11,696 nt of DNA from Zygophlyctis sp. KS116. Lineage: Eukaryota; Fungi; Chytridiomycota. Below, piece after piece: positions 1 to 11,696 of this stretch; within the stretch, counting starts at the first letter, position 1, and each line of letters opens with the position of its first letter. The notes under the pieces were generated by a model. The model did not search any database. It was not told the origin of the DNA and saw nothing but the letters and a program-made list of their open reading frames with translations. The stretch spans positions 1-11,696 of the forward strand of contig BAAFSQ010000306.1 in the NCBI GenBank assembly GCA_054661495.1. Direction: 5' to 3'. Position numbers and translations under genes: made by a program.

Positions 1-77
1 CAGGAGTCGCTGATCATGAAACTAGTATTGCCATTCTTGTAGGGAATTTACTCTATAAAACAGTGGATATTAATGAA
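1..77 (+). repeat. Left copy of an exact 77-bp inverted repeat at the window ends
   Basis: 1-77 is the exact reverse complement of 11620-11696; the first mismatch is at position 78 versus 11619. Confidence 0.98.
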
Positions 78-542: not shown

Positions 543-3500
543 ATGATTTCGATCTCCTTTAAGAAATCTATCTTGGCATTGGCTCTAGCTGCACTTATAG
601 CTGGAGTAAATTCCCAGGCTGTGAACACAGCAATACAATCACATGAAATCAAGGTTATTATTGCCGTCGATAATCGCTATAAATTAACGGTTGATGGGCA
701 GACAATTCCGGTAAATCCTAACTATGCTTGGTATATGATCAATACTCATAAGTTTACCGTGACAGGAGATGGGCCATGGGTAGTAGCTGTGGATGGTATT
801 GATGAAGGAGTTATTGCGGGCTTCGTTGGCGCAGTTTATGTTGACGGTGTATTGAAGGCAGCTACGGGAACTACTGATCCTGGAATAACTGATTTCAAAA
901 CAATACTAAATCCAACCGCTGGATGGAATCAGTCTGCAAGTTTTGATGATTCACTATGGGCTCTACCAGCAATATGCAGTGCTCAATATTGGGGAGGCTA
1001 TTTGGTTAACAACTTTAGAACTCAAACAAAGACCAATGCTTCTGTCGTATGGTTAGAATCTTGCGGAAAATTTTGGATCACAGCGTACTTTCGAGCTACT
1101 GTGGCTCCTGCAATTAAAATCCTTCCAGAATATTGCGATTCAAACTCTCCACAGTGCTGCCATGTTGTCCGTATGTGGCAATTGCTAGGAAATACAACTA
1201 CAGTTGACCCCAATATCAACAATAGCTGTTGCTCTATGGCTGGAGTTACTTGCAATACAGATCTTGGAACAGTCTTAACGTTGAATTGGACCTCACAAGG
1301 TCTGTCCGGAATAATCCCTTCGAATATTGGAAATTTGCCAGATTTACAAAATATGTAAGTCTACTTGCGAATTGAAATATAAGTGACTTGAGTAACAATC
1401 ATCTTACTGGCACGATCCCAACCCAGATTGGAAAATTGACCAATTTGCAAAATCTGTAAGAATTTTTGGAAAGTAATATTTAAGTAACTTTACGAATAAT
1501 CAAATTTCAGGAGGTATTATCTCTCAGATTGGGAATTTGACAAATTTGATGACGCTGTAATATTTTTAATCTAAAAGACAAAGTGGTCTAGCCAAAAATA
1601 AACTCTCGGGACCAATCCCTCCAGAAATTGGAAAGTTGAACTATTTGGTTGAACTGTAAGTATTTTGCGAATTTAACTCTTAGTAATGTAAACAGCAATT
1701 TCCTCTCCGGAGTAGTTCCAGCTGAGATTGTTGACTTGCCAAATTTGCGAACTTTGTATCCATTGTTTTATTTTTGAAATTATAGAGTTGTTTCTAACAA
1801 TGTGGATCTCACTGGATATATAATCACCAGATGCGGGGCGACTGTGAATGTGTAAATATATCATATTTAAGATTTTTAGAAGAACAGAAGGTACGGGGTC
1901 CACTTTTCGTAGCTGTGTGAATTCTTGCGATTCTTCTTCCCCTCAATGCTGCTGGGCTATCCGAATTTGGAAATTGCTTGGAAAGAATACTACAGCAGAC
2001 TCTACTACTCAAAATGGTTGCTGTTTCTTGCCTGGAGTGACTTGCAATGCTGATCTTGGTACCGTTACGAAAATTGCTTGGAGCAAAATGAGTCTTTCAG
2101 GGCCTTTGCCTTCGGAAATTGGAAAATTGTCGAATTTGAACTCGCTGTAAATATTTCTATATACTAAAAGTAGAGTGACCTTACGAACAATCAGCTCACG
2201 AGATTCATTCCTAAAGAGATTGGCGCTGCAAAAAGTTTGAATTGGCTGTAAATAATTCCTACGTTAAAAATACAGTGATCTTTCTAACAATCAACTCACG
2301 GGATCTATTCATAAAGAATTTGGAAATTTAACAAGTTTGACTTATCTGTAAATTTTTCCTAATGTTAAAATTACAGTAATCTTTACAACAATCAACTCAC
2401 TGGATCTTTTCCAAAAGAAATCGGAAATTTAACAAGTTTGACTGACATGTATTTATAGGCTAGATTTAATATTAAAGTGGTCTGGGTCGAAATGGACTTA
2501 CAGGCTCAATTCCTGGAGAAATTGGAAATTTGATCAATCTGCGTGTACTGTAACCATTATCAATTTTAAATTCTAGTGATTTGCATATGAATCAATTGAC
2601 GGGATCGATTCCTAGAGAAGTAGAAAACTTAGTAAGTTTGACCGTCCTGTAAATATCTAATAATTTAAAAATTAAGTGTGTTGGATCGAAATTATCAAAT
2701 GTCTGGAGCGATTCCTTCCGAATTCGGAAACATGAAAAATTTGGTTAGTAGCAGCATGATTTACCTTTCTCTTTCAGGTGTTGTTCCTGCATCCATCGGA
2801 AATTTAACAAATTTAGTTGAACTGTAACTTTTTTATCATTAATTCAAGGTCTATCGTTGGCAAATCTATCTCAGGACCAATTCCAGCAACGATCGGAAAT
2901 ATGAAGAAGCTGAAAATTCTGTACATAATCACTGCAAATTTACATTTTAGTAATCTTTCGAACAATAGAATAAATGGAACAATCCCATCAACTATCGGCG
3001 CCATGGCCAGCTTACAAAATGTGTAATTTTAATTGAAATTCATAGACAGTTATCTTTCACACAATATATTAAATGAAACAATTCCCAAAGAGATTGAAGA
3101 ATTATCTCAGCTTCGGAATTTGTAAATTTATCATTCTAATTCTTAAGTGCAATTTCTGGAAATGCGAATTTGACTGGAGATTTTTACCCGCGATGTGGAG
3201 TGGCAGTGTAATCATTTTTAAATTAATACAGTAGCCAAGCTCAAGGTACAGGAATTACTCTGCGTAATTGTGTAAACTATTGTGATTCGTCTTCATTTGA
3301 ATGTTGTTGGGTTATACGCTCCTTGAGATTGATGGGAAAAACTACTACGGTAAATGATGTGAGTAGCAATGGCTGCTGTATGATGACTGGTGTAACTTGC
3401 TCGGGAACCCAATCTAATGTTACTTGGATAAGTTGGCCCAATCAAAATCTTACTGGCTCAATACCTGCCGATTTAGGCAACATTAAAAGTTTGCAGAAGC

Positions 3501-4267
3501 TGTAAAATAATCAAGATTTAATTATTAGATATTTAAACAACAATGATTTAAGCGGGCCCATTCCTATATCGGTTGGAAATTTACCAAAGTTAGAGGAGCT
3601 GTAGAAATTGATAAACTAATAATTTATAGTGCTGTTTACAACAACACAAATTTGAACGGAAGCTTTAAGACAAAATGCAGCATCACAATGTAATTTTCCT
3701 ATATTTATGAAAAGATATTCTGCAAATACATCCATTACGATTGAAAAAACAGAGGAGTTGCATTGTATATCTGCCTTAAATACTGAGGTACAGAATCCGC
3801 GTGAAATTAAGGTTACTATTGCCGTTGACAATCGCTACAAATTAACGGTTGATGGACAGACTGTTTCTGTAGATCCCAGTTATTGGTGGGGAATGATCAA
3901 TACTCACAAGTTTACTGTGACAGGAAATGGTCCATGGGTAGTTGCAGTAGAGGCAATTGATGAAGGAGCTGTTGCTGGCTTTCTTAGTGCCGTATATGTA
4001 GACGATGTTCTGAAGGCAGAGACAGGTACTACTGATCCTGGATTAGCAGCTTTTAAGACAGTACTCAATCCATCCACTGGATGGAATCAGTCTACGAGTT
4101 TTGATGATTCACTCTGGTCAAAACCAGCGCTTTGCGTTACTAACCCATGGGGTGGCCTCATCAACAACTTTAGAGCTCAAACCAAATCCAATGCTTCTGC
4201 GGTATGGTTGGAATCTTGCGGAAAAATATTGATTACAGCTAAGTTTAGAGTTGTTGTGGCAGCGTAA
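543..4267 (+). CDS. Secreted lectin-like/LRR mosaic protein, 21 exons, about 1055 aa: signal peptide, jelly-roll lectin-like domain, 3 x [Cys-rich N-cap + 24-aa LRRs + C-cap], second lectin-like domain
   Basis: Hand-spliced exons: 543-1354, 1384-1455, 1485-1556, 1584-1655, 1684-1755, 1786-1851, 1880-2146, 2176-2247, 2276-2347, 2377-2448, 2478-2549, 2577-2648, 2677-2823, 2849-2920, 2951-3022, 3050-3121, 3148-3207, 3235-3501, 3529-3600, 3630-3689, 3715-4267. Total 3168 nt in one open frame, all introns GT-AG. The N-terminus MISISFKKSILALALAALIAGVNSQ is signal-peptide-like. Repeats fit the plant-specific LRR consensus LxxLxLxxNxLSGxIPxEIGxL. No transmembrane segment is seen. Intron 7 needs a GAG acceptor, and introns 6 and 17 have in-frame NAGNAG alternatives. 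Confidence 0.85.
645..1110 (+). other. Lectin-like beta jelly-roll domain, copy 1 (N-terminal)
   Basis: Motifs IAVDNRYKLTVDG, VVAVDGIDEG..AGF and GWNQSASFDDSLW resemble the xDN.(Y/F).L.VNG...GW....FDDS.W pattern of galactose-binding-like jelly rolls (Pleurotus-type lectins, glycosidase accessory domains). Assignment is from motif recall, not a search. Confidence 0.6.
1355..3714 (+). repeat. Array of about 100-bp units (72-nt LRR exon + 25-30-nt phase-2 intron) organised in three modules
   Basis: Thirteen exons are exactly 72 nt. The intron always interrupts the same codon (LxxL|xLxxN). N-cap exons 7 and 18 are both 267 nt with the chosen acceptors, and the C-cap exons are 66, 60 and 60 nt. 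Confidence 0.92.
3803..4267 (+). repeat. Lectin-like domain, copy 2 (C-terminal), a diverged direct repeat of 645-1110
   Basis: Clear DNA and protein similarity, e.g. AATCGCTAyAAATTAACGGTTGATGG and CTGGATGGAATCAGTCT are shared; EIKVTIAVDNRYKLTVDGQT aligns with EIKVIIAVDNRYKLTVDGQT. Confidence 0.95.
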
Positions 4268-4299
4268 AATCTTGCATGATTTATATCATTGATAAGTGA

Positions 4300-4333
4300 T
4301 ATTTGCAGGAAAATAAAAATGGATTGCATTAAT
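4300..4333 (+). terminator. Probable polyadenylation region of the lectin-LRR gene
   Basis: AATAAA lies about 45 nt after the stop, within TTTGCAG..AATAAAAA..ATTGCATTAAT, a block conserved again after the relic's stop (about 4985-5017). Confidence 0.5.
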
Positions 4334-4606
4334 TTTGAAATGAGGTGAGATTTTTTTCCACGGATAATTAAATTTATTGAGTAATAAGCATAAAGATCTC
4401 TAGTCATTGCAATGGATGTCAAAATTACTAGCTTGATGCCTTATAGCATCTGCCATCTTTTATTCTGTCAACGCTCTGCGGAGCCAGTCTGAGAAGGATT
4501 CGGATCTGTTTCTTGCGAAGGCGTTGATTGATCTTAAAATGGAGCTGCTGAAATAATTTGAAATGACGGTTATTCAGGAGAAAGTCTTAAAACGTATAGT
4601 TTTTAG

Positions 4607-4975
4607 CTCTTGTTCAGATCTATCCATCGAATATTAAATGTATCCGCAATAATTATGGGGGTAGAATCTCAAGTTACTTGTGATTCCTCATCTTCGGACT
4701 GCTGTTGGGTTATCGGCAACTGATGGATCGGGAAAGCGACAGATCCTGGCATTATTGATTTCAAAACAATACTTAATCCATCCGCTGGATGGAATCAGTC
4801 TGCAAGTTTTGATGATTCACTTTGGTCTATACCAGCAGTCTGCAATATCAACCCTTGGGGAGGTTGGCTAAGTACCTTCCGGTCTTTAACAAAGTCGAAT
4901 GCGTCGGTGGTGTGGTTAGAATCTTGTTGGAAAGTCTGGATAACAGCCTACTTTAGAGTTGTTGTATCGGCTTAA
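4607..4975 (+). pseudogene. Internally deleted paralog of the lectin-LRR gene (signal-peptide remnant + Cys-cap fragment + C-terminal half of a lectin-like domain)
   Basis: One frame reads LLFRSIHRILNVSAIIMGVESQVTCDSSSSDCCWVIGN*WIGKATDPGIIDFKTILNPSAGWNQSASFDDSLWSIPAVCNINPWGGWLSTFRSLTKSNASVVWLESCWKVWITAYFRVVVSA*. There is an in-frame TGA at 4721-4723 and no ATG ahead of the signal remnant (TAG at 4604-4606). The downstream 3'UTR also resembles that of the intact gene. Confidence 0.85.
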
Positions 4976-5076
4976 AATTGGATTTTTGCAGCAGAATAAA
5001 AAGTCAATTGCATTAATCTATTATCAAGATGACATACAGTCCAATCCTGCATTACGAGATAGAAATATAAGTATAT

Positions 5077-8000
5077 TTAATTAATCATTCCCAATGCCCG
5101 CCTAGTCTTCATTTTTGGCAATTTGGAACAGTTTTCTTGATTTTCTTGATCTTGGTTCTCAACAAATGGCGAATTTAATTCAGAATAGATTTGATCGCCT
5201 CCAAGTTCTGCAATAATGTCTTCATGACTTTTAGTTAGTGTCCATGACGATGGATATCTACTATTGAATAATATATGCTTACTCAAACGCTCTCCTCTTT
5301 GGTGTTACCCCACTCGATTGATCTGCATCCAACTTTCTTATTTGAATTTCTTTGTACAATTTTGATATTTCTGTCCTAAAATCTTTTAATAATTCTTGTT
5401 CCGTTTTGTGAATACAATTTGTCTTGTCTTTAATACTTGAATATGACTCTTGTAGTGTTTTTTTAACCTTCTGAGTCCCAGCTTCGATAAAATCTAGAGA
5501 TCCGTCAAAGGATATTTGGGCCGTTTTTAAAATATCTGACATATAGCTTTTAGATTCATTAACATTATCGATCACTATTTTTCAGTAAAAAATTCATGAT
5601 ATTACTTTTTGATAATGAACTTATCGATAAAGATAGATTTTTTTCCATTTTAGCTCGTTGCTCATTTCCCAAAGATTCTGCTTCTTTTTGAGATGCTTCC
5701 ATATCCGAACAAAAACCATTTAAATAGTTCAAATTGATCTAAATCCTGAATTCAAATGATATACCTTCATATTCTTCTCAAGAATATCTATTGTTTCACA
5801 ATATTCCTCTGCTTTACAAGACAAAAAATTATCAAATTCTGATTGCTCTCTTTTCTGTTGCTGTTTATTCCATTCCCCTGAGGCTAAGTTTTCGGCGATT
5901 TCAGTTGCAAACATCGCATTGGTAGCAGAAACTAAACGATTTAGCCTCTCTTCATTTTTGCTAAAGATTTCCCCAGATTTTTGACAAACTATGTTTAAAA
6001 AGCTTTCTTTTTCTTCCAACATTGTTGATCGCATTGAGTCAATCGTCTGATTAAGGATTTCAACATGTTTTTCCAGCTTTAAATTCTAATATTATTTCCA
6101 ATTGGAGTTTACCTTCTCCAAAAGTCGTTTCTCTCTCCATGAATAAGACTCATTCCCTCCACTTAATGCTTTTTGGAAAAAATCTTTCAATTTTTTACTG
6201 GAATCACTTAAAATTTCCTGAATATGTTGATTAGCATTCAGTTGCTATGATTAGCATAATAAAGTTACTTGTTCTTTTATCTGTGAAATAGCAGATATTA
6301 TATGTTCAGCCGTTTTTCGATCTTTCGCTTGTTGTAATTCGAACGCTTTCTCAAAATTAATAATTGTGGTGTTCAAATCCTTAGCAACAGTATCTAAAGC
6401 AAATACATTTTGTTCAGAAGAAGTCGATACGAAAGTTTGAAAAGTATTGAATAAATCTTTTTGTGCTTTTAGCTGACCAGATATATCCATTTTAAGGCTA
6501 TTAATAATCTAAATAATATAAATGGATTTGCTATATACCTCAGACTTTTGAATATAACTTTGAGACATAATATCCTCTAAATTCATTAATGAATCGTTTC
6601 TTTGGCTATGTGCATTTCCAATCCTTTGTTCCAGATTTTCAATATGATGATGTAAGATGTCTTGCATTGATGTGAAACTCATTAAATTTCTCGCCTCCAA
6701 AGTTCTTTTACGATCTAAAATAGAATTAATTAAGTGACGTTTACCTAGAGCAACATGTACAATCTCTAAATCATTGACGGTTTCGGAAATTGTACTAACG
6801 AGTCCACCTGCAATCTTGTCCAGCTTTTTCTCAGTTTGTTGGTACGCACTGTATCATTAAATGTTCAAAATTATACCCAAGGATTATTTTCTGCTGCTCT
6901 AAAGATAATTGCAGATTCTTGAGATCGATTAACGCTAGTGAAAGTCCATTCTTTTTCGCATCTAATTCCTGTATTGTTTCCTCCAATCGAAACTCGGAAT
7001 TGTTGAGTCTCTTTTCTGTTTCTGCAAACTTTTCATTAAGAGTATTGATTTGCTCCTGCTTGAAAGCTATTGAATTTGTAATTTCCTCGATTCGTGCTTG
7101 ACGTCCTTGATTTTCTAGAAGTAGCAAATCATAGTTCTATCATTTCAAAGTTACTTAATTTACCTCTGATGACATATATATCCCATTTTTATCCCTTGTA
7201 GCCTATTAAAGTTAATATAATAGAATATACCAGTAGATCTGCCTTTAATCGTTCAATTTCAGTAACATATTCCTTGATCAATGCGCGTTTAGTCATTCTC
7301 TGATTTACTTCTGGCTTATTCCTTATATTCTTTGCACGATGAGCATATTCAAGGGTAGATAATGTTTCTTCAAGATTACATTTTGCTGGAGAAACTGCTG
7401 CAATAATACAAGTCTTTGTCCGGCCTCCTAGAGAATCTTGTAAAAGCCTTGTTAGCTTGCTTTCACGATACGGAATATGAGGTGAACGTTCAACCAATGC
7501 ATTGATGACTCTTCCAAGAGTTAACAAACTTTGATTGATCATGCCTGCTTCTTTTGCCCGCTTATTTTCTGCTCCAGATCTTCCAATATTCTCTGATCCG
7601 GCTAAATCAACCAAATTTAGTTTTCCAACCTTTAGTAGTTCTTCCCCTTCTGGTGTGGTTTCCTTTATATGTATTGTAACTGAAAATATACAATGAGAAC
7701 GACTACCGATTACTGAAAGAAACAAACCTGGACATTTCATTCAACTTTGTAGCTGCCATTTGCTTTTTCTTTGATCCTTTTTCCAAAATACTCAAGACAT
7801 CAAGAGTATTTTTTACTGTTATTTCTTCCAATCCTTGAATAACAACTGCCCCTTTCCTGGCCAAATCTTCAAAAACTCTCAATTTCTTAAAATCGTCTGG
7901 GGCAGATAGCAGATCTTTAAGCTCCTCATTGTAAAGCTCTATAAACTAGATTGAGATTGTTGTAAATACCGAAACACGAACAGAATACTCTGCTATATCC

Positions 8001-8734: not shown

Positions 8735-9487
8735 ATGAATAATTCTATTGACTTTAGAACCTTAATATCTCAAGAAGACTTTAACCAGAAACAGCAATGG
8801 GAAAGATCAAGATGCGACATGATGAGATCATTAAGAGATATTTTAGATGCTGTTAGGGAAACACAACAGCAAACAATAAGCCGCATGATTGAGGTGCTGG
8901 AACGGAATGCAATCGGGGCAGGCTCAGTTACTAGCAACGCCTTACAGACCATTCTTGATCAAAAATTCTCTGAGCAGCTTCAAACTATACAATCAATCAT
9001 GGGTAATATTCAGCCATCAACCACTGCAACTGTCCCTGATGTGGATATTTCACAAACAGAACCACAAGTGGCACGACAGGTTTTTCATGTTAATGGGCGA
9101 TTAAGAAGATTGCCAGCGGATTATCAGCTTCCTGATTGTGGACCTGCAGAAGCTTTCAGACAATGGTGTTTTCCAAATACTATGAATAATATCTCTGCCC
9201 TAAAAGATTGCGATAAACATGATTTCTCAGGAGAAAGACGCAGATTTGGAGAACTTCAGAAATTAATGAGAGACTTTGAGCGTTATGCTAATTTAAAAAA
9301 ATTGCCTATTAGAACAGAATCTGATATTGGACTCATAGTCAGTCGCTGGTTAGCGGATAATATCTCGCCATACACTCCCCAAGGCAGACCTCGAACTAGA
9401 ATTCCACAGATGAAATGGACAAACATTCTGAAATTATGGATTACTGAGCCTTCCATGTACGAGGGAACATGCCGCGATGGGGATTAA
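8735..9487 (+). CDS. Intronless 250-aa ORF resembling the C-terminal region of Crypton-type (tyrosine recombinase DNA transposon) proteins; recombinase domain absent
   Basis: First ATG is at 8735 (the track starts at a TTG, 8696). Motifs LERNAIGAGSVT, FHVNGRLRRLPADYQLPDC...FRQW and D.....RRRFGELQKLMRDFE recall oomycete/fungal Crypton-associated proteins (LE.RAIGAGTVT...GRFRRVP.DF.FP). The ORF is directly visible; the family assignment is from memory. Confidence 0.6.
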   Translation: MNNSIDFRTLISQEDFNQKQQWERSRCDMMRSLRDILDAVRETQQQTISRMIEVLERNAIGAGSVTSNALQTILDQKFSEQLQTIQSIMGNIQPSTTATVPDVDISQTEPQVARQVFHVNGRLRRLPADYQLPDCGPAEAFRQWCFPNTMNNISALKDCDKHDFSGERRRFGELQKLMRDFERYANLKKLPIRTESDIGLIVSRWLADNISPYTPQGRPRTRIPQMKWTNILKLWITEPSMYEGTCRDGD

Positions 9488-9566
9488 TTATAAATATTTT
9501 TTTAGTTTGTGGCACTGATCAGGATAATAATCCCTTTAAAAATTCATTTATTCGACCTCATAAGAT

Positions 9567-11696
9567 CTATATTGTTAACATTAAATGAGGATCTGAAAGA
9601 GTAATAACGATTGTTGGCCAACAAATTGCAGGACTTTTGTAAAAAAATATAATATAATACCGATACAAATAAAGCTCCTGACGAAACAAACCGCCTTTTA
9701 GCTCCAAGTTTACAGACTTCCAGGATTCAAGGAATGTATACCCTTTTTTTCTAATCAAGTCATTTAAAAGACCTTCCTCAAGCATCTTATGATTAGAGTT
9801 TCTACTTTTACCCATTCAATTAAATTGAGTGCCGAATCAACCAATATTTTTGAATGCGGATTAATTTCAAGCTGTTTCATGATTTCTTCAAATAATAATG
9901 TTGATCTATTTTTGAAGCTTAAGATTTGTTTCATCCAGGTACATTTAAGGATCAAACACTAGAGTTTATATTTGAATTCTTACTTCATGTAGAAAACGAT
10001 AAAACGCCACATAGACAGGAATCGAAATGGGCGCAGATTGACATATTGAGAATATCCGGTCAAATATAAAATCAAAGCAAAATTCATTCCAAACATCGTG
10101 GCAAACCTTGTTTACTCCAAGAGATTTTCTTTTTAATACAAGTAATATGTTTACGATACTTTCTAGAACGATTGCAATCTCTAATTGTCCATCAAATATG
10201 TAAATCTTTTCATTAATAGCGCTTAAATATACTTTTGAGCAGGCGAGATGTATGAGCAAACCTCTTAGCTTAACAAACATTAAATGAGATTTCTTGTCAA
10301 CTTCTTGGAATGGTGCATTATCCAACAAAGTAAGTGATGTTGACATAATTTTCGCTAATGGTGCAATCATCATTGAAGGAAGAGAATTATTCGAAAACTC
10401 TGAAATCAAATGCTCCAAAGACCAGGAATTTCGCATTTTTACAATTTCATTTTCAGAAATCTACTTTTAAAAATGTTTATTCACCTGTGCATTAGGCAAC
10501 TGAATCAAAAGCGACGAAATAAAAAATCCGACACTTATCTTGCTTGCAGTGAAATATCTAAAATCAAGCTCGTCCAATTCATCAAATTCCTGCTTACTAA
10601 ATGAATGAAGGCATTGAATAAGCATCGGGAAACCAATCGCTTCAAGGAAAACTATAATAAGTATTTAAATATTTACCTTGTGGACCCTGATTAGTAGCTC
10701 CAATAATTATCAGAAAGTTTACAACACCCAATAGTTTAGGAATTTTGTCTGATATTTCATTTTTAGAAATAATCCTTTGCATTAGAGCATTATTTTAAGT
10801 TTTACTTTATCAGAAACCCAAATAGTTTCTTGTAACTTTTAAATTGTACATTTAACCCGATAGGAACGTATTTTGCAATCGAAAATACCAATTGATTCAA
10901 AGGATCCCATTCTTTTACATTAAAATATCAATAAAATATACTTTCAAAAGGAATATTTTGTGGTTGCAGCAAAATCCAATCCAAAAAATAATTCCATAAT
11001 TGATACAGCACGTCTGCCTCAAGTCCAGGTGCTATAAATTCAATTAATTTCGCTGATAATTCAACCACTTCCTTTGGATCATTTATACAATCTTTAATGA
11101 TTTCCTAGAGTTAATAAATGCATGTATACAGTGATCATTTCAACCTTGTTTAAGATAGCAATTTCCTTGATTCTAGAATCTAATTCTCCATTGGTATGAC
11201 AATAACAAAGCCTAATTTTTAAATACTGATAATAAATACCAGAATTTATAGAGATTCTTTGTAAAGTTTTTCCAAGAATATCCCAAAACTCTTGATCCTT
11301 TATGGAGCCATTCCAACATTTGTACAGGATGAATGAATAAAAATTCATGTACATTGTTTACATAAAGATTTAGAGACTGGCAGGCCTGTAGCAAGTTTGA
11401 AACAGCGAGTGGCTCTATAGATTAGTCCACGATTTATATACTCTTCTCCAGTTCCTTCAGATCATGATCCACAGCATTACAAAGCAACATTACAAGATAT
11501 AGTAAATTTCTGATTCCGTAAAAACCAAGTGTTTTATCTAATTCATCTATTGAATTAATAATCGACGACTTACCGTATTCATCCAACCAAGTTTCAACAA
11601 CTTGATAAATCCAAACAATTTCATTAATATCCACTGTTTTATAGAGTAAATTCCCTACAAGAATGGCAATACTAGTTTCATGATCAGCGACTCCTG
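9567..11696 (-). CDS. Uncharacterised multi-exon protein (5'-partial), probably alpha-helical
   Basis: A continuous reading frame can be built from the window end (GVADHETSIAILVGNLLYKTVDINEIVW...) to the TAG at 9567-9569 by removing about 10 tiny GT-AG introns. This joins the track fragments 11434-11634, 11212-11394, 11094-11354, 9966-10436, 9764-9955 and 9567-9815. No family motif was recognised. Confidence 0.75.
11620..11696 (-). repeat. Right copy of the 77-bp inverted repeat, lying inside a coding exon
   Basis: Reverse complement of 1-77, in frame with the minus-strand gene. Confidence 0.98.

What the first reader, a model, noticed from the sequence alone, without database searches (positions are those of the whole stretch)
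1355..3714. One-LRR-per-exon cassette architecture: all 20 introns are phase 2
Seen: every internal exon is symmetric (2-2) and a multiple of 3 (72, 60, 66, 147, 267 nt), so any exon or whole module can be skipped, duplicated or swapped in frame. The intron falls inside the xxL|xLxx beta-strand, so each new exon junction creates a new combination of concave-surface residues. The neighbouring kinesin has introns in mixed phases. Known: similar layouts occur in plant ERECTA-type kinases and brown-algal (Ectocarpus) ROCO LRR genes, where exon shuffling was proposed. Inference: this is a substrate for combinatorial diversification by shuffling or alternative splicing, here with introns of only about 28 nt.
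Basis: partly seen in the sequence, partly recalled or inferred. Interest (0 to 1): 0.8.

Follow-up and report, generated by a model that had tools for sequence, protein, structure and literature searches.

The report
One-repeat-per-exon LRR gene in chytrid
A gene for a secreted leucine-rich-repeat protein in a freshwater chytrid-like fungus has each 24-residue repeat on its own 72-base exon, cut at the same codon position every time; this layout is already known from plants, brown algae and ciliates, and here it lets repeats be gained or lost in frame in the DNA, with no sign that exons are skipped during splicing.

Summary
Observation confirmed. The gene at 543-4267 (+) has 21 exons and 20 GT-AG introns of 24-30 nt. 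All 20 introns are phase 2. Internal exons are 72 nt (13 of them), 66, 60 (2), 147, 267 and 270 nt.

The layout is family-wide, not special to this gene. G000 holds at least 91 cap-domain matches. In paralog loci, 115 of 117 strict LRR motifs have AG at the same acceptor offset and 113 of 117 have GT at the same donor offset. A named chytrid, Entophlyctis helioformis, has the same layout with about 58-nt introns.

The split codon is the first Leu of xxLxLxx. That is the position and phase reported for rice LRR kinases.

Intron-less JGI contigs are cDNAs of relatives. One aligns to the window with gaps exactly at introns 18-20. A cDNA/genomic pair, 94-100% identical in five of six shared repeats (88% in the sixth), differs by exactly two repeat units in frame. 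The only splice variants seen are two retained introns.

The alternative-splicing part is not. The concave face evolves at about the neutral rate (omega 1.39, 0.91-2.05) against 0.35 elsewhere.

The scan found this architecture before on other DNA of this genome (s1-560686, s1-564362). Verdict: new member of a known kind.

The parts
543..4267 (+). Whole coding region: 21 exons and 20 phase-2 introns, 1056 codons. Order: signal-peptide-like start, beta-rich end domain, three modules of Cys-rich cap + LRRs + C-cap, then a second copy of the end domain.
   Evidence: Model and translation. Synonymous excess in strain variants. Indels only in non-coding parts.
543..1354 (+). Exon 1 (812 nt): hydrophobic N-terminus (signal peptide judged by eye), end-domain copy 1 (about 615-1106), cap 1 (1128-1349) and the first LRR.
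   Evidence: No Pfam hit.
1355..1879 (+). Module 1 cassettes: introns 1-6, four 72-nt LRR exons (1384-1455, 1485-1556, 1584-1655, 1684-1755) and a 66-nt C-cap exon (1786-1851).
   Evidence: Unit-by-unit colinear with paralog C488 at 83, 80, 76 and 73% identity.
1880..2146 (+). Exon 7 (267 nt): cap 2 plus one LRR.
   Evidence: Matches the N-terminal caps of plant LRR receptor kinase ectodomains in the PDB (HSL1 8e-8, SERK1, BAK1). 91 matches in G000.
2147..2175 (+). Intron 7. The only in-frame acceptor is a GAG that lies 2 nt after a TAG. Populations X4 and X5 lack these 2 nt, so their intron ends in TAG and is 27 nt long.
   Evidence: table 4, place 2172.
2176..2448 (+). Exons 8, 9 and 10 with introns 8 and 9: the most recent tandem duplication of exon+intron units in this gene.
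   Evidence: Exon identity 9 vs 10 is 83% and 8 vs 9 is 73%. Introns 8 vs 9 are 82% identical. Other units are 41-70% identical..
2449..3231 (+). Rest of module 2: introns 10-17, 72-nt exons 11, 12, 14, 15 and 16, the 147-nt exon 13, and the 60-nt C-cap exon 17 (3148-3207).
2677..2823 (+). Exon 13 (147 nt): two repeats plus one codon with no intron between them. Its centre (2744-2777) starts GTTAGT and ends TTTCAG like a former intron, but it is 34 nt long, so it must be read through to keep the frame.
   Evidence: No indels here in X4 or X5.
2921..2950 (+). Intron 14 (30 nt): the only intron that would stay in frame without a stop if retained.
   Evidence: The other 19 introns give an in-frame stop, 17 of them in the very next codon.
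3232..3501 (+). Exon 18 (270 nt): cap 3 plus one LRR.
   Evidence: 76% identical to cDNA contig L041.
3502..3714 (+). Introns 18, 19 and 20, 72-nt exon 19 (3529-3600) and 60-nt C-cap exon 20 (3630-3689).
   Evidence: Gaps in the alignment with the intron-less homologous contig L041 coincide exactly with the three introns.
3715..4267 (+). Exon 21 (553 nt): linker and end-domain copy 2, then the TAA stop.
   Evidence: The fold prediction failed.

Best explanation
This is one member of a large family of secreted plant-type LRR proteins, with at least 91 cap-domain matches in 12.7 Mb, in a freshwater chytrid-like fungus. Each 24-residue repeat sits on a 72-nt exon bounded by phase-2 introns that split the first Leu codon of xxLxLxx. 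The uniform phase is not a set of 20 independent events. It is inherited from one ancestral exon+intron unit that was copied in tandem, and the same unit is present in chytrid LRR kinases and at the same codon position in plant LRR kinases.

The mechanical consequence is as follows. The genomic period (about 100 nt) is not a multiple of 3, but the spliced period (72 nt) is. The split codon is fixed as hydrophobic by the upstream exon's last two bases. So any in-register unequal recombination or conversion between units or paralogs adds, removes or swaps whole repeats in frame.

This works in the germline. Shown here: unit-number differences, tandem unit duplication, mosaic identity tracts, and faster change on the concave face. 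Inferred: that this variation serves binding diversity, for example in host or prey recognition or as secreted LRR effectors. Splicing is most likely constitutive. Failure to splice gives an immediate stop for 17 of 20 introns, so retention yields a truncated or degraded product, not a new isoform.
For: - Model and phases.
- Family-wide conservation: in paralog loci 115 of 117 strict motifs have AG at -6 and 113 of 117 have GT at +68. 91 cap matches in G000.
- The same 72-nt phase-2 exons occur in the Entophlyctis helioformis LRR-kinase gene (18 of 18 motifs, period about 130 nt).
- Same split codon and phase in rice LRR kinases: PMC3050792.
- LRR identity: 24-residue consensus xLxNNxLxGxIPxEIGNLxxLxx. 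Pfam LRR_1, LRR_8 and LRR_14 pass their cut-offs on full-length cDNA homologues. PDB hits are all plant LRR kinase ectodomains.
- Splicing shown in relatives: the cDNA contig L041 against the window, and cDNA L081 against genomic L082, where five 27-28-nt introns are removed exactly.
- Germline cassette change: a two-unit in-frame difference between copies that are 94-100% identical in five of six shared repeats, 88% in the sixth. Variable unit numbers per module. Tandem duplication of exons 8-10. Mosaic 100% tracts.
- Selection: concave-face omega 1.39 (0.91-2.05) against 0.35 (0.28-0.43) for other positions, over 34 independent unit pairs.
- Retention gives stops, and retained introns are the only variants seen.
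Against: - There is no RNA from this organism, so splicing of the window's own introns is inferred from relatives and from variation patterns.
- For this gene itself the evidence is of conservation. The pieces from X4 and X5 are colinear, dN/dS is 0.34 against C488, and amino-acid changes are no more frequent on the concave face (6 of 20) than elsewhere (23 of 72).
- Omega on the concave face is not significantly above 1, so relaxed constraint explains it as well as diversifying selection does.
- Pairs were picked by exon identity, which may bias the estimates.
- Identical tracts shared with paralogs mean that some of the mosaicism could be assembly chimerism. In X1 and X2 the unitig depth is about 3x at 926-1340 and 3630-4400.
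- This copy may be impaired: intron 7 needs a GAG acceptor that lies behind a TAG, and exon 8 has lost the conserved Gly.
- The chytrid identity of the genome rests on earlier scan notes and on the best named homologue. I did not test it independently.
Confidence: 0.68

Rival explanations
1. Pure historical legacy. The cassette layout is only the trace of how the array grew. It gives no benefit, and this gene is a conserved protein with a fixed number of repeats.
For: The window gene is colinear in populations X4 and X5 over 1499-2296, 2394-3697 and 2550-3396. dN/dS is 0.34 in LRR exons and 0.20 in exon 1 against C488. There is no concave-face excess in that pair. Most of its units are old, at 41-70% identity.
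Against: Across the family, unit numbers differ between close copies. The concave-face positions change about four times faster than the rest. Mosaic tracts point to ongoing exchange between paralogs.
Confidence: 0.2
2. Alternative splicing. Symmetric exons are skipped in varying combinations to give many isoforms from one gene, as proposed for brown-algal ROCO genes.
For: All internal exons are 2-2 symmetric, and any junction restores a hydrophobic codon. Brown-algal ROCO genes with 72-bp exons have several annotated splice variants (PMC11378527).
Against: Related cDNA contigs keep a strict 72-nt spacing. The only variants are two retained introns. No 24-aa-multiple length variants occur in six cDNA protein clusters. 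The one repeat-number difference found is encoded in the DNA. Introns of 24-30 nt favour intron definition, where errors give retention (established knowledge). The kinesin has introns of the same size, so their size is not special to this gene.
Confidence: 0.06
3. The window copy is a decaying or non-functional allele, or a partly chimeric assembly.
For: In intron 7 the in-frame acceptor is GAG, 2 nt after a TAG whose use would shift the frame. Other populations lack the 2 nt. Exon 8 reads LTRFIP in place of LTGSIP. Exon 13 reads through an intron-like stretch. A relic fragment of a further copy lies just downstream at 4736-4972. The contig ends in a 77-nt perfect inverted repeat, and identical tracts are shared with paralogs.
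Against: A 1056-codon frame stays open across 21 exons. Among strain variants, 20 are synonymous and 16 non-synonymous. A 2174-nt unitig (1311-3484) identical to the window is present in two runs.
Confidence: 0.12
4. Programmed somatic assembly from silent cassettes, as in lamprey VLR genes or as speculated for Ectocarpus.
For: Only the cassette-like layout itself.
Against: There are no extra LRR cassettes on either strand of the window outside the gene. Introns of 24-30 nt cannot hold cassettes. The genes are complete in the assembled DNA.
Confidence: 0.02

Closest known systems
Plant LRR receptor kinases with one LRR per exon (rice group 5 LRR kinases, ERECTA/SERK-type genes)
   Same: 24-residue plant-type repeat with GxIP. 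72-nt exons. Phase-2 introns that split the first Leu of xxLxLxx (PMC3050792). The Cys-containing N-cap resembles plant caps.
   Different: No transmembrane or kinase part. There are three cap-LRR-C-cap modules in one protein, flanked by an unrelated beta-rich domain. The cap has a CC...CC pattern and does not reach Pfam LRRNT_2. Introns are 24-30 nt.
Entophlyctis helioformis (chytrid) LRR-kinase gene BC831DRAFT_505043
   Same: Best named homologue of the family. 18 of 18 LRR motifs lie in 72-nt exons with the same acceptor and donor offsets, and intron sequences are repeated along with the exons.
   Different: It carries a kinase domain. Introns are about 58 nt and GC is 52%. It is not a secreted multi-module protein.
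Brown-algal ROCO LRR genes (Ectocarpus, Saccharina)
   Same: One LRR per 72-bp exon, uniform intron phase, variable repeat number, and concave-face sites proposed to be under positive selection (PMC3341825, PMC11378527).
   Different: Their exon starts at GxxP, so the intron is at another place in the repeat. They are cytoplasmic GTPases. They have silent cassettes in long introns and reported splice variants; neither is seen here.
Tetrahymena 90-bp-exon LRR genes
   Same: Very large family, exact exon length, more than 96% phase-2 introns, explained by clonal expansion of an exon+intron unit and ectopic recombination (PMC6564038).
   Different: 90-bp exons, another LRR class, another lineage.
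Fungal secreted LRR effectors (ZtLRR and relatives, including one from the chytrid Globomyces pollinis-pini)
   Same: Secreted fungal proteins built of plant-like LRRs. They are reported to mimic plant receptor ectodomains (bioRxiv 10.1101/2025.08.22.671746).
   Different: Those are single-LRR-domain proteins present in one or a few copies. Their exon structure was not reported. No functional link to the window gene was tested.

Membership tests
Leucine-rich repeat proteins, plant-specific (24-residue) class | Tandem 24-residue repeats with LxxLxLxxNxLxGxIPxxLxxL | tested here: met
   13 exon peptides align to xLxNNxLxGxIPxEIGNLxxLxx. 140 family units show the same profile.
Leucine-rich repeat proteins, plant-specific (24-residue) class | Pfam LRR models above their curated cut-offs | tested here: inconclusive
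   Single window exons are too short and give no hit. Full-length cDNA homologues pass LRR_1, LRR_8, LRR_4 and LRR_14. The joined window protein was not sent to any search tool.
Leucine-rich repeat proteins, plant-specific (24-residue) class | Plant-type N-terminal cap (LRRNT_2) | tested here: inconclusive
   PDB matches to the caps of HSL1, SERK1 and BAK1 at E 8e-8 to 1e-4, but no Pfam LRRNT_2 hit at E below 0.1.
One-repeat-per-exon symmetric cassette architecture | Each internal LRR exon encodes exactly one repeat | tested here: met
   13 exons of 72 nt. The exceptions are cap exons, C-cap exons and one fused 147-nt exon.
One-repeat-per-exon symmetric cassette architecture | All introns of the array are in one phase | tested here: met
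   20 of 20 are phase 2. In paralog loci 115 of 117 motifs share the acceptor offset and 113 of 117 the donor offset.
One-repeat-per-exon symmetric cassette architecture | Plant-type position: the intron splits the first Leu of xxLxLxx | tested here: met
   Junction codons, compared with the statement in PMC3050792. No plant gene was examined directly.
One-repeat-per-exon symmetric cassette architecture | Repeat number varies between close copies | tested here: met
   Modules with 1 to about 11 units. A two-unit difference between near-identical copies in a relative. Not seen at the window locus itself.
Brown-algal ROCO type of LRR exon shuffling | Exon begins at GxxP; silent cassettes lie in introns or on the other strand | tested here: not met
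   The exon begins one base before xLxxN. There are no extra cassettes on either strand.
Brown-algal ROCO type of LRR exon shuffling | Exon-skipped splice isoforms | tested here: inconclusive
   No RNA for this organism. Related cDNAs show only intron retention.
Brown-algal ROCO type of LRR exon shuffling | Positive selection on concave-face residues | tested here: inconclusive
   Omega 1.39 with bootstrap range 0.91-2.05, against 0.35 elsewhere. For the window against C488 there is no concave-face excess.
Chytrid or plant LRR receptor kinases | Transmembrane segment and kinase domain after the LRRs | tested here: not met
   The ORF ends in the beta-rich end domain. No kinase hit in any exon.
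Fungal secreted LRR effectors (sLRR) | Signal peptide and a single LRR domain only | tested here: not met
   The N-terminus looks like a signal peptide by eye, with no predictor run. The protein has three LRR modules and two further domains.

The most novel reading that the evidence does not exclude
The exon+intron unit itself is shared between the green lineage and chytrids. It has the same repeat class, the same 72-nt exon, the same split codon and the same phase. That would mean either a very old LRR 'founder exon' or transfer of intron-bearing LRR genes between algae or plants and their chytrid parasites. In chytrids it has since been multiplied into a repertoire of secreted binding proteins, about 90 genes or modules here, which changes by in-frame cassette gain and loss.
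Probability: 0.25. Interest if true: 0.65.

Novelty: new member of a known kind. Interest (0 to 1): 0.45.

Why it matters
Fungi were long described as lacking LRR recognition receptors. Recent work reports LRR kinases and secreted LRR effectors in chytrids, but I found no description of their exon structure. This locus and its relatives show three things. Chytrid plant-type LRR genes are built from the same phase-2, 72-nt cassette as plant receptor kinases. The family is large. Near-identical copies differ by whole cassettes in frame. That gives a concrete and testable route for repertoire change in a group of algal and pollen parasites, and a dated character (the intron position) for asking where plant-type LRRs came from.

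Tried and rejected
- Pfam on single exons gave nothing usable.
- AlphaFold2 on the 183-aa end domain with a 7-row alignment failed (mean pLDDT 40.5), so no fold search was run. The Atlas feature search gave only a weak lead to rhamnosidase-N / lectin-like beta-sandwiches (0.89).
- No RNA run holds the locus. Read laying could therefore only show DNA contigs.
- Many 'joints' have sides of only 20-31 nt and come from paralogous repeats. I do not count them. One X4 contig (record 19, depth 2.7) suggests a different unit after 2420 but is too weak to use.
- My first automatic gene builders failed or chose wrong acceptors. The final models were curated by repeat register and by kinesin motifs.
- No related cDNA contig matches a G000 gene closely enough (about 65-94% over its matching pieces) to serve as a transcript of this genome.
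- L045 against L042 is a close pair in the cap (95%) but not in the array, so it was not used as a gene/transcript pair.
- The kinesin exons could not be used for a taxonomic check, because the word search only sees proteins of similar length.
- The big representative search, the complex prediction and the covariance-model tools were not needed.
It was not sent to any search or fold tool. Searches used single exons by reference, or natural cDNA contigs by reference.
Full report
**1. What is in the sequence**

The + strand from 543 to 4267 carries one gene. I rebuilt it from the sequence by following the reading frame and the 24-residue repeat register. It has 21 exons and 20 GT-AG introns of 24-30 nt (mean 27.7). 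Every intron is phase 2. Every internal exon is a multiple of three: 72 nt thirteen times, then 66, 60 twice, 147, 267 and 270. The joined frame is open for 1056 codons in the standard code and ends at TAA 4265-4267.

The protein reads as follows:
- a hydrophobic N-terminus that looks like a signal peptide (judged by eye only);
- a beta-rich domain of about 160 residues;
- three modules, each made of a Cys-rich cap, a run of LRRs and a short C-cap exon ending in a conserved Cys-Gly;
- a second copy of the beta-rich domain.

The three modules hold 5, 11 and 2 full repeats.

**2. Where the introns sit**

The last two bases of each exon (CT, AT, GT or TT) and the first base of the next exon form the first hydrophobic residue of xxLxLxx. 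Each concave-face strand is therefore encoded by two exons. Positions 23 and 24 come from the upstream exon, and positions 2, 4 and 5 from the downstream one. Whatever exon follows, the junction codon stays Leu, Ile, Val, Phe or Met.

**3. Is it more than chance?**

The kinesin-5 gene on the minus strand (8402-5080) has 12 introns of the same size class (24-31 nt) with phases 2,0,2,0,0,2,0,0,0,0,1,2. Tiny introns are therefore a property of the genome, and uniform phase is a property of the LRR gene. Twenty independent phase-2 introns would be about 3e-10, but they are not independent: they are copies of one unit.

**4. Support for the model without RNA from this organism**

No public RNA run holds the locus. 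Four lines of evidence support the model.
- Contigs of two other freshwater metagenomes (X4, X5) differ from the window by 1-2% (up to about 10% in one X5 piece). All four of their indel sites lie upstream of the ATG or inside predicted introns 7 and 18.
- Of the 36 listed exonic variants, 20 are synonymous in my frame.
- A G-to-A change at the last base of intron 17 in X4 lies next to another AG 3 nt downstream, which would keep the frame.
- An intron-less homologous contig (L041) aligns to 3200-3740 with three gaps that are exactly introns 18, 19 and 20.

**5. The layout is family-wide and older than this genome**

The cap exon finds 91 places in the 12.7-Mb assembly. In the paralog loci I fetched, 115 of 117 strict LRR motifs have AG at -6 and 113 of 117 have GT at +68. 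That is the same 72-nt exon and the same phase.

Freshwater metagenome contigs of relatives fall into two kinds:
- DNA contigs with a 97-104-nt period and the same splice offsets;
- contigs with a strict 72-nt period, long open frames and short flanks.

That the second kind are cDNAs is shown directly. L081 (JGI) and L082 (ENA metagenome) are 94-100% identical in five of six shared repeats (88% in the sixth), and L082 has five 27-28-nt GT-AG inserts at the phase-2 site that L081 lacks. Two of the cDNA-type contigs each keep a single intron (29 and 32 nt) at that site.

Full-length cDNA proteins pass the Pfam LRR models. Their best named relatives are LRR kinases of the chytrid Entophlyctis helioformis, followed by plant LRR receptor kinases. 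The Entophlyctis gene has 18 of 18 motifs in 72-nt exons with the same offsets and about 58-nt introns that are themselves repeated.

According to PMC3050792, rice LRR kinases have 72-nt exons whose phase-2 introns split the first Leu of xxLxLxx. That is the same place as here. In Ectocarpus ROCO genes the 72-nt exon starts at GxxP, which is a different place (PMC3341825). Tetrahymena has 90-bp LRR exons with more than 96% phase-2 introns, explained by clonal expansion of a unit (PMC6564038).

**6. Evidence on shuffling**

Within the gene, exons 8, 9 and 10 are 73-83% identical and introns 8 and 9 are 82% identical. Most other units are 41-62% identical, up to 70%.

Between paralogs:
- Module 1 is colinear unit by unit with C488 (83, 80, 76, 73%), while module 2 is not.
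- Modules in other genes carry from 1 to about 11 units.
- Identity between the window and C488, and between the window and C1165, is mosaic. Tracts of 100% over 150-250 nt that span exon and intron are flanked by 70-85%. This is what gene conversion or recent recombination gives. It could also partly reflect assembly through repeats, since unitig depth is about three-fold over 926-1340 and 3630-4400.

The clearest case is in a relative. cDNA L081 and genomic L082 share six units at 88-100% and a 94%-identical (about 98% outside the intron gap) 3' part. But the cDNA has two more 72-nt units where the genomic copy has only a 28-nt intron. That is a DNA-level, in-frame two-cassette difference between very close copies.

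At the window locus itself, the pieces from X4 and X5 are colinear.

**7. Evidence on selection**

Across 140 units, entropy is highest at positions 2, 4, 5, 23 and 24. In 34 independent closest-unit pairs, omega is 1.39 (bootstrap 0.91-2.05) on those five positions and 0.35 (0.28-0.43) elsewhere. The concave face therefore changes about four times faster and at roughly the neutral rate. Positive selection is not shown.

For the window against C488, dN/dS is 0.34 in LRR exons and 0.20 in exon 1, and changes are not concentrated on the concave face. Introns (21% different) are no more diverged than exons (21.5%) and less than synonymous sites (dS 0.55). The tiny introns are therefore themselves constrained, or homogenised.

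**8. Evidence on alternative splicing**

Nothing supports exon skipping.
- Related cDNAs show only retained introns.
- Six cDNA protein clusters with 32 members show no length steps of 24 residues.
- The one repeat-number difference found is genomic.
- Retention of 19 of the 20 window introns gives an in-frame stop, and in 17 of them it is the very next codon, because phase 2 followed by GTAA or GTAG reads NNG TAA/TAG. Only intron 14 (30 nt) would read through.
- Introns this short are expected to be defined across the intron, which gives retention and not skipping when it fails. This is established knowledge, not tested here.
- No spare cassettes lie near the gene, which argues against assembly from silent copies.

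**9. Caveats for this copy**

Intron 7 has three AGs in a row. Only the last, a GAG, keeps the frame, and X4 and X5 lack two bases so that their intron ends in TAG. Exon 8 has lost the conserved Gly. Exon 13 reads through an intron-like 34-nt stretch. The copy may be impaired in this strain.

The chytrid identity of the genome comes from earlier scan notes and from the best named homologue. I did not test it independently.

**10. Comparison and verdict**

The architecture works like, and belongs with, the one-repeat-per-exon LRR genes of plants (same intron site). It is analogous to brown-algal ROCO genes and Tetrahymena LRR genes.

The literature already reports expanded LRR kinases, an 'LRR effector' family and galactose-binding-like genes in chytrids (PMC13618815), and secreted LRR effectors across fungi including one chytrid (bioRxiv 10.1101/2025.08.22.671746). 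My searches found no description of the exon structure in fungi. The scan has already noted the same architecture at other loci of this genome.

I therefore rate it a new member of a known kind, of moderate interest. The interesting residue is the shared intron site with plants and the direct example of in-frame cassette gain or loss.

The spliced protein of the window gene was translated only inside scripts to check the frame. It was not sent to any search or fold tool. Searches used exons by reference, or natural cDNA contigs by reference.

Noticed in passing
window 1-77 and 11620-11696: The contig ends are a perfect 77-nt inverted repeat of each other. 77 is a common assembler word length, so this looks like an assembly or amplification artefact and not a transposon end.
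   Followed up: partly
window 8402-5080 (-): Complete kinesin-5 (BimC/Eg5-type) gene of 999 codons with 13 exons and 12 introns of 24-31 nt. Together with the LRR gene this gives 32 introns of 24-31 nt, so very short introns seem to be genome-wide.
   Followed up: partly
window 4736-4972 (+), with a CC-motif remnant just upstream (about 4680-4735): Relic of a further copy of the end domain (71% identical to residues 105-183), directly after a stump of a cap motif. It is a truncated paralogue just downstream of the gene.
   Followed up: partly
window 8735-9487 (+): Intron-less 250-codon ORF with no Pfam match, in a stretch of higher GC (0.39-0.40) than its neighbours. Its nature is unknown.
   Followed up: no
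window about 9500-11696 (-): Another multi-exon gene with tiny introns appears to run off the end of the contig into the terminal inverted repeat. It was not modelled.
   Followed up: no
window 926-1340 and 3630-4400: Unitigs of runs X1 and X2 covering these stretches have about three times the depth of the unique 1311-3484 unitig. These tracts are therefore shared identically by several paralogues, which raises the chance of chimeric joins in the assembly.
   Followed up: partly
L078 (Entophlyctis helioformis, JAHLKH010000068.1) 4800-7250: An array of at least 14 LRR exons of 72 nt whose roughly 58-nt introns are nearly identical to each other. This points to a recent tandem expansion of exon+intron units in a named chytrid LRR kinase.
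   Followed up: partly
L081 665-808 against L082 600-630: Two whole LRR units are present in a cDNA contig and absent from a genomic contig from another sample that is 94-100% identical to it in five of six shared repeats (88% in the sixth).
   Followed up: yes
L058 448-476 and L056 549-580: Single retained introns (29 and 32 nt) in otherwise fully spliced LRR transcripts of relatives. Each gives an immediate TAA.
   Followed up: yes
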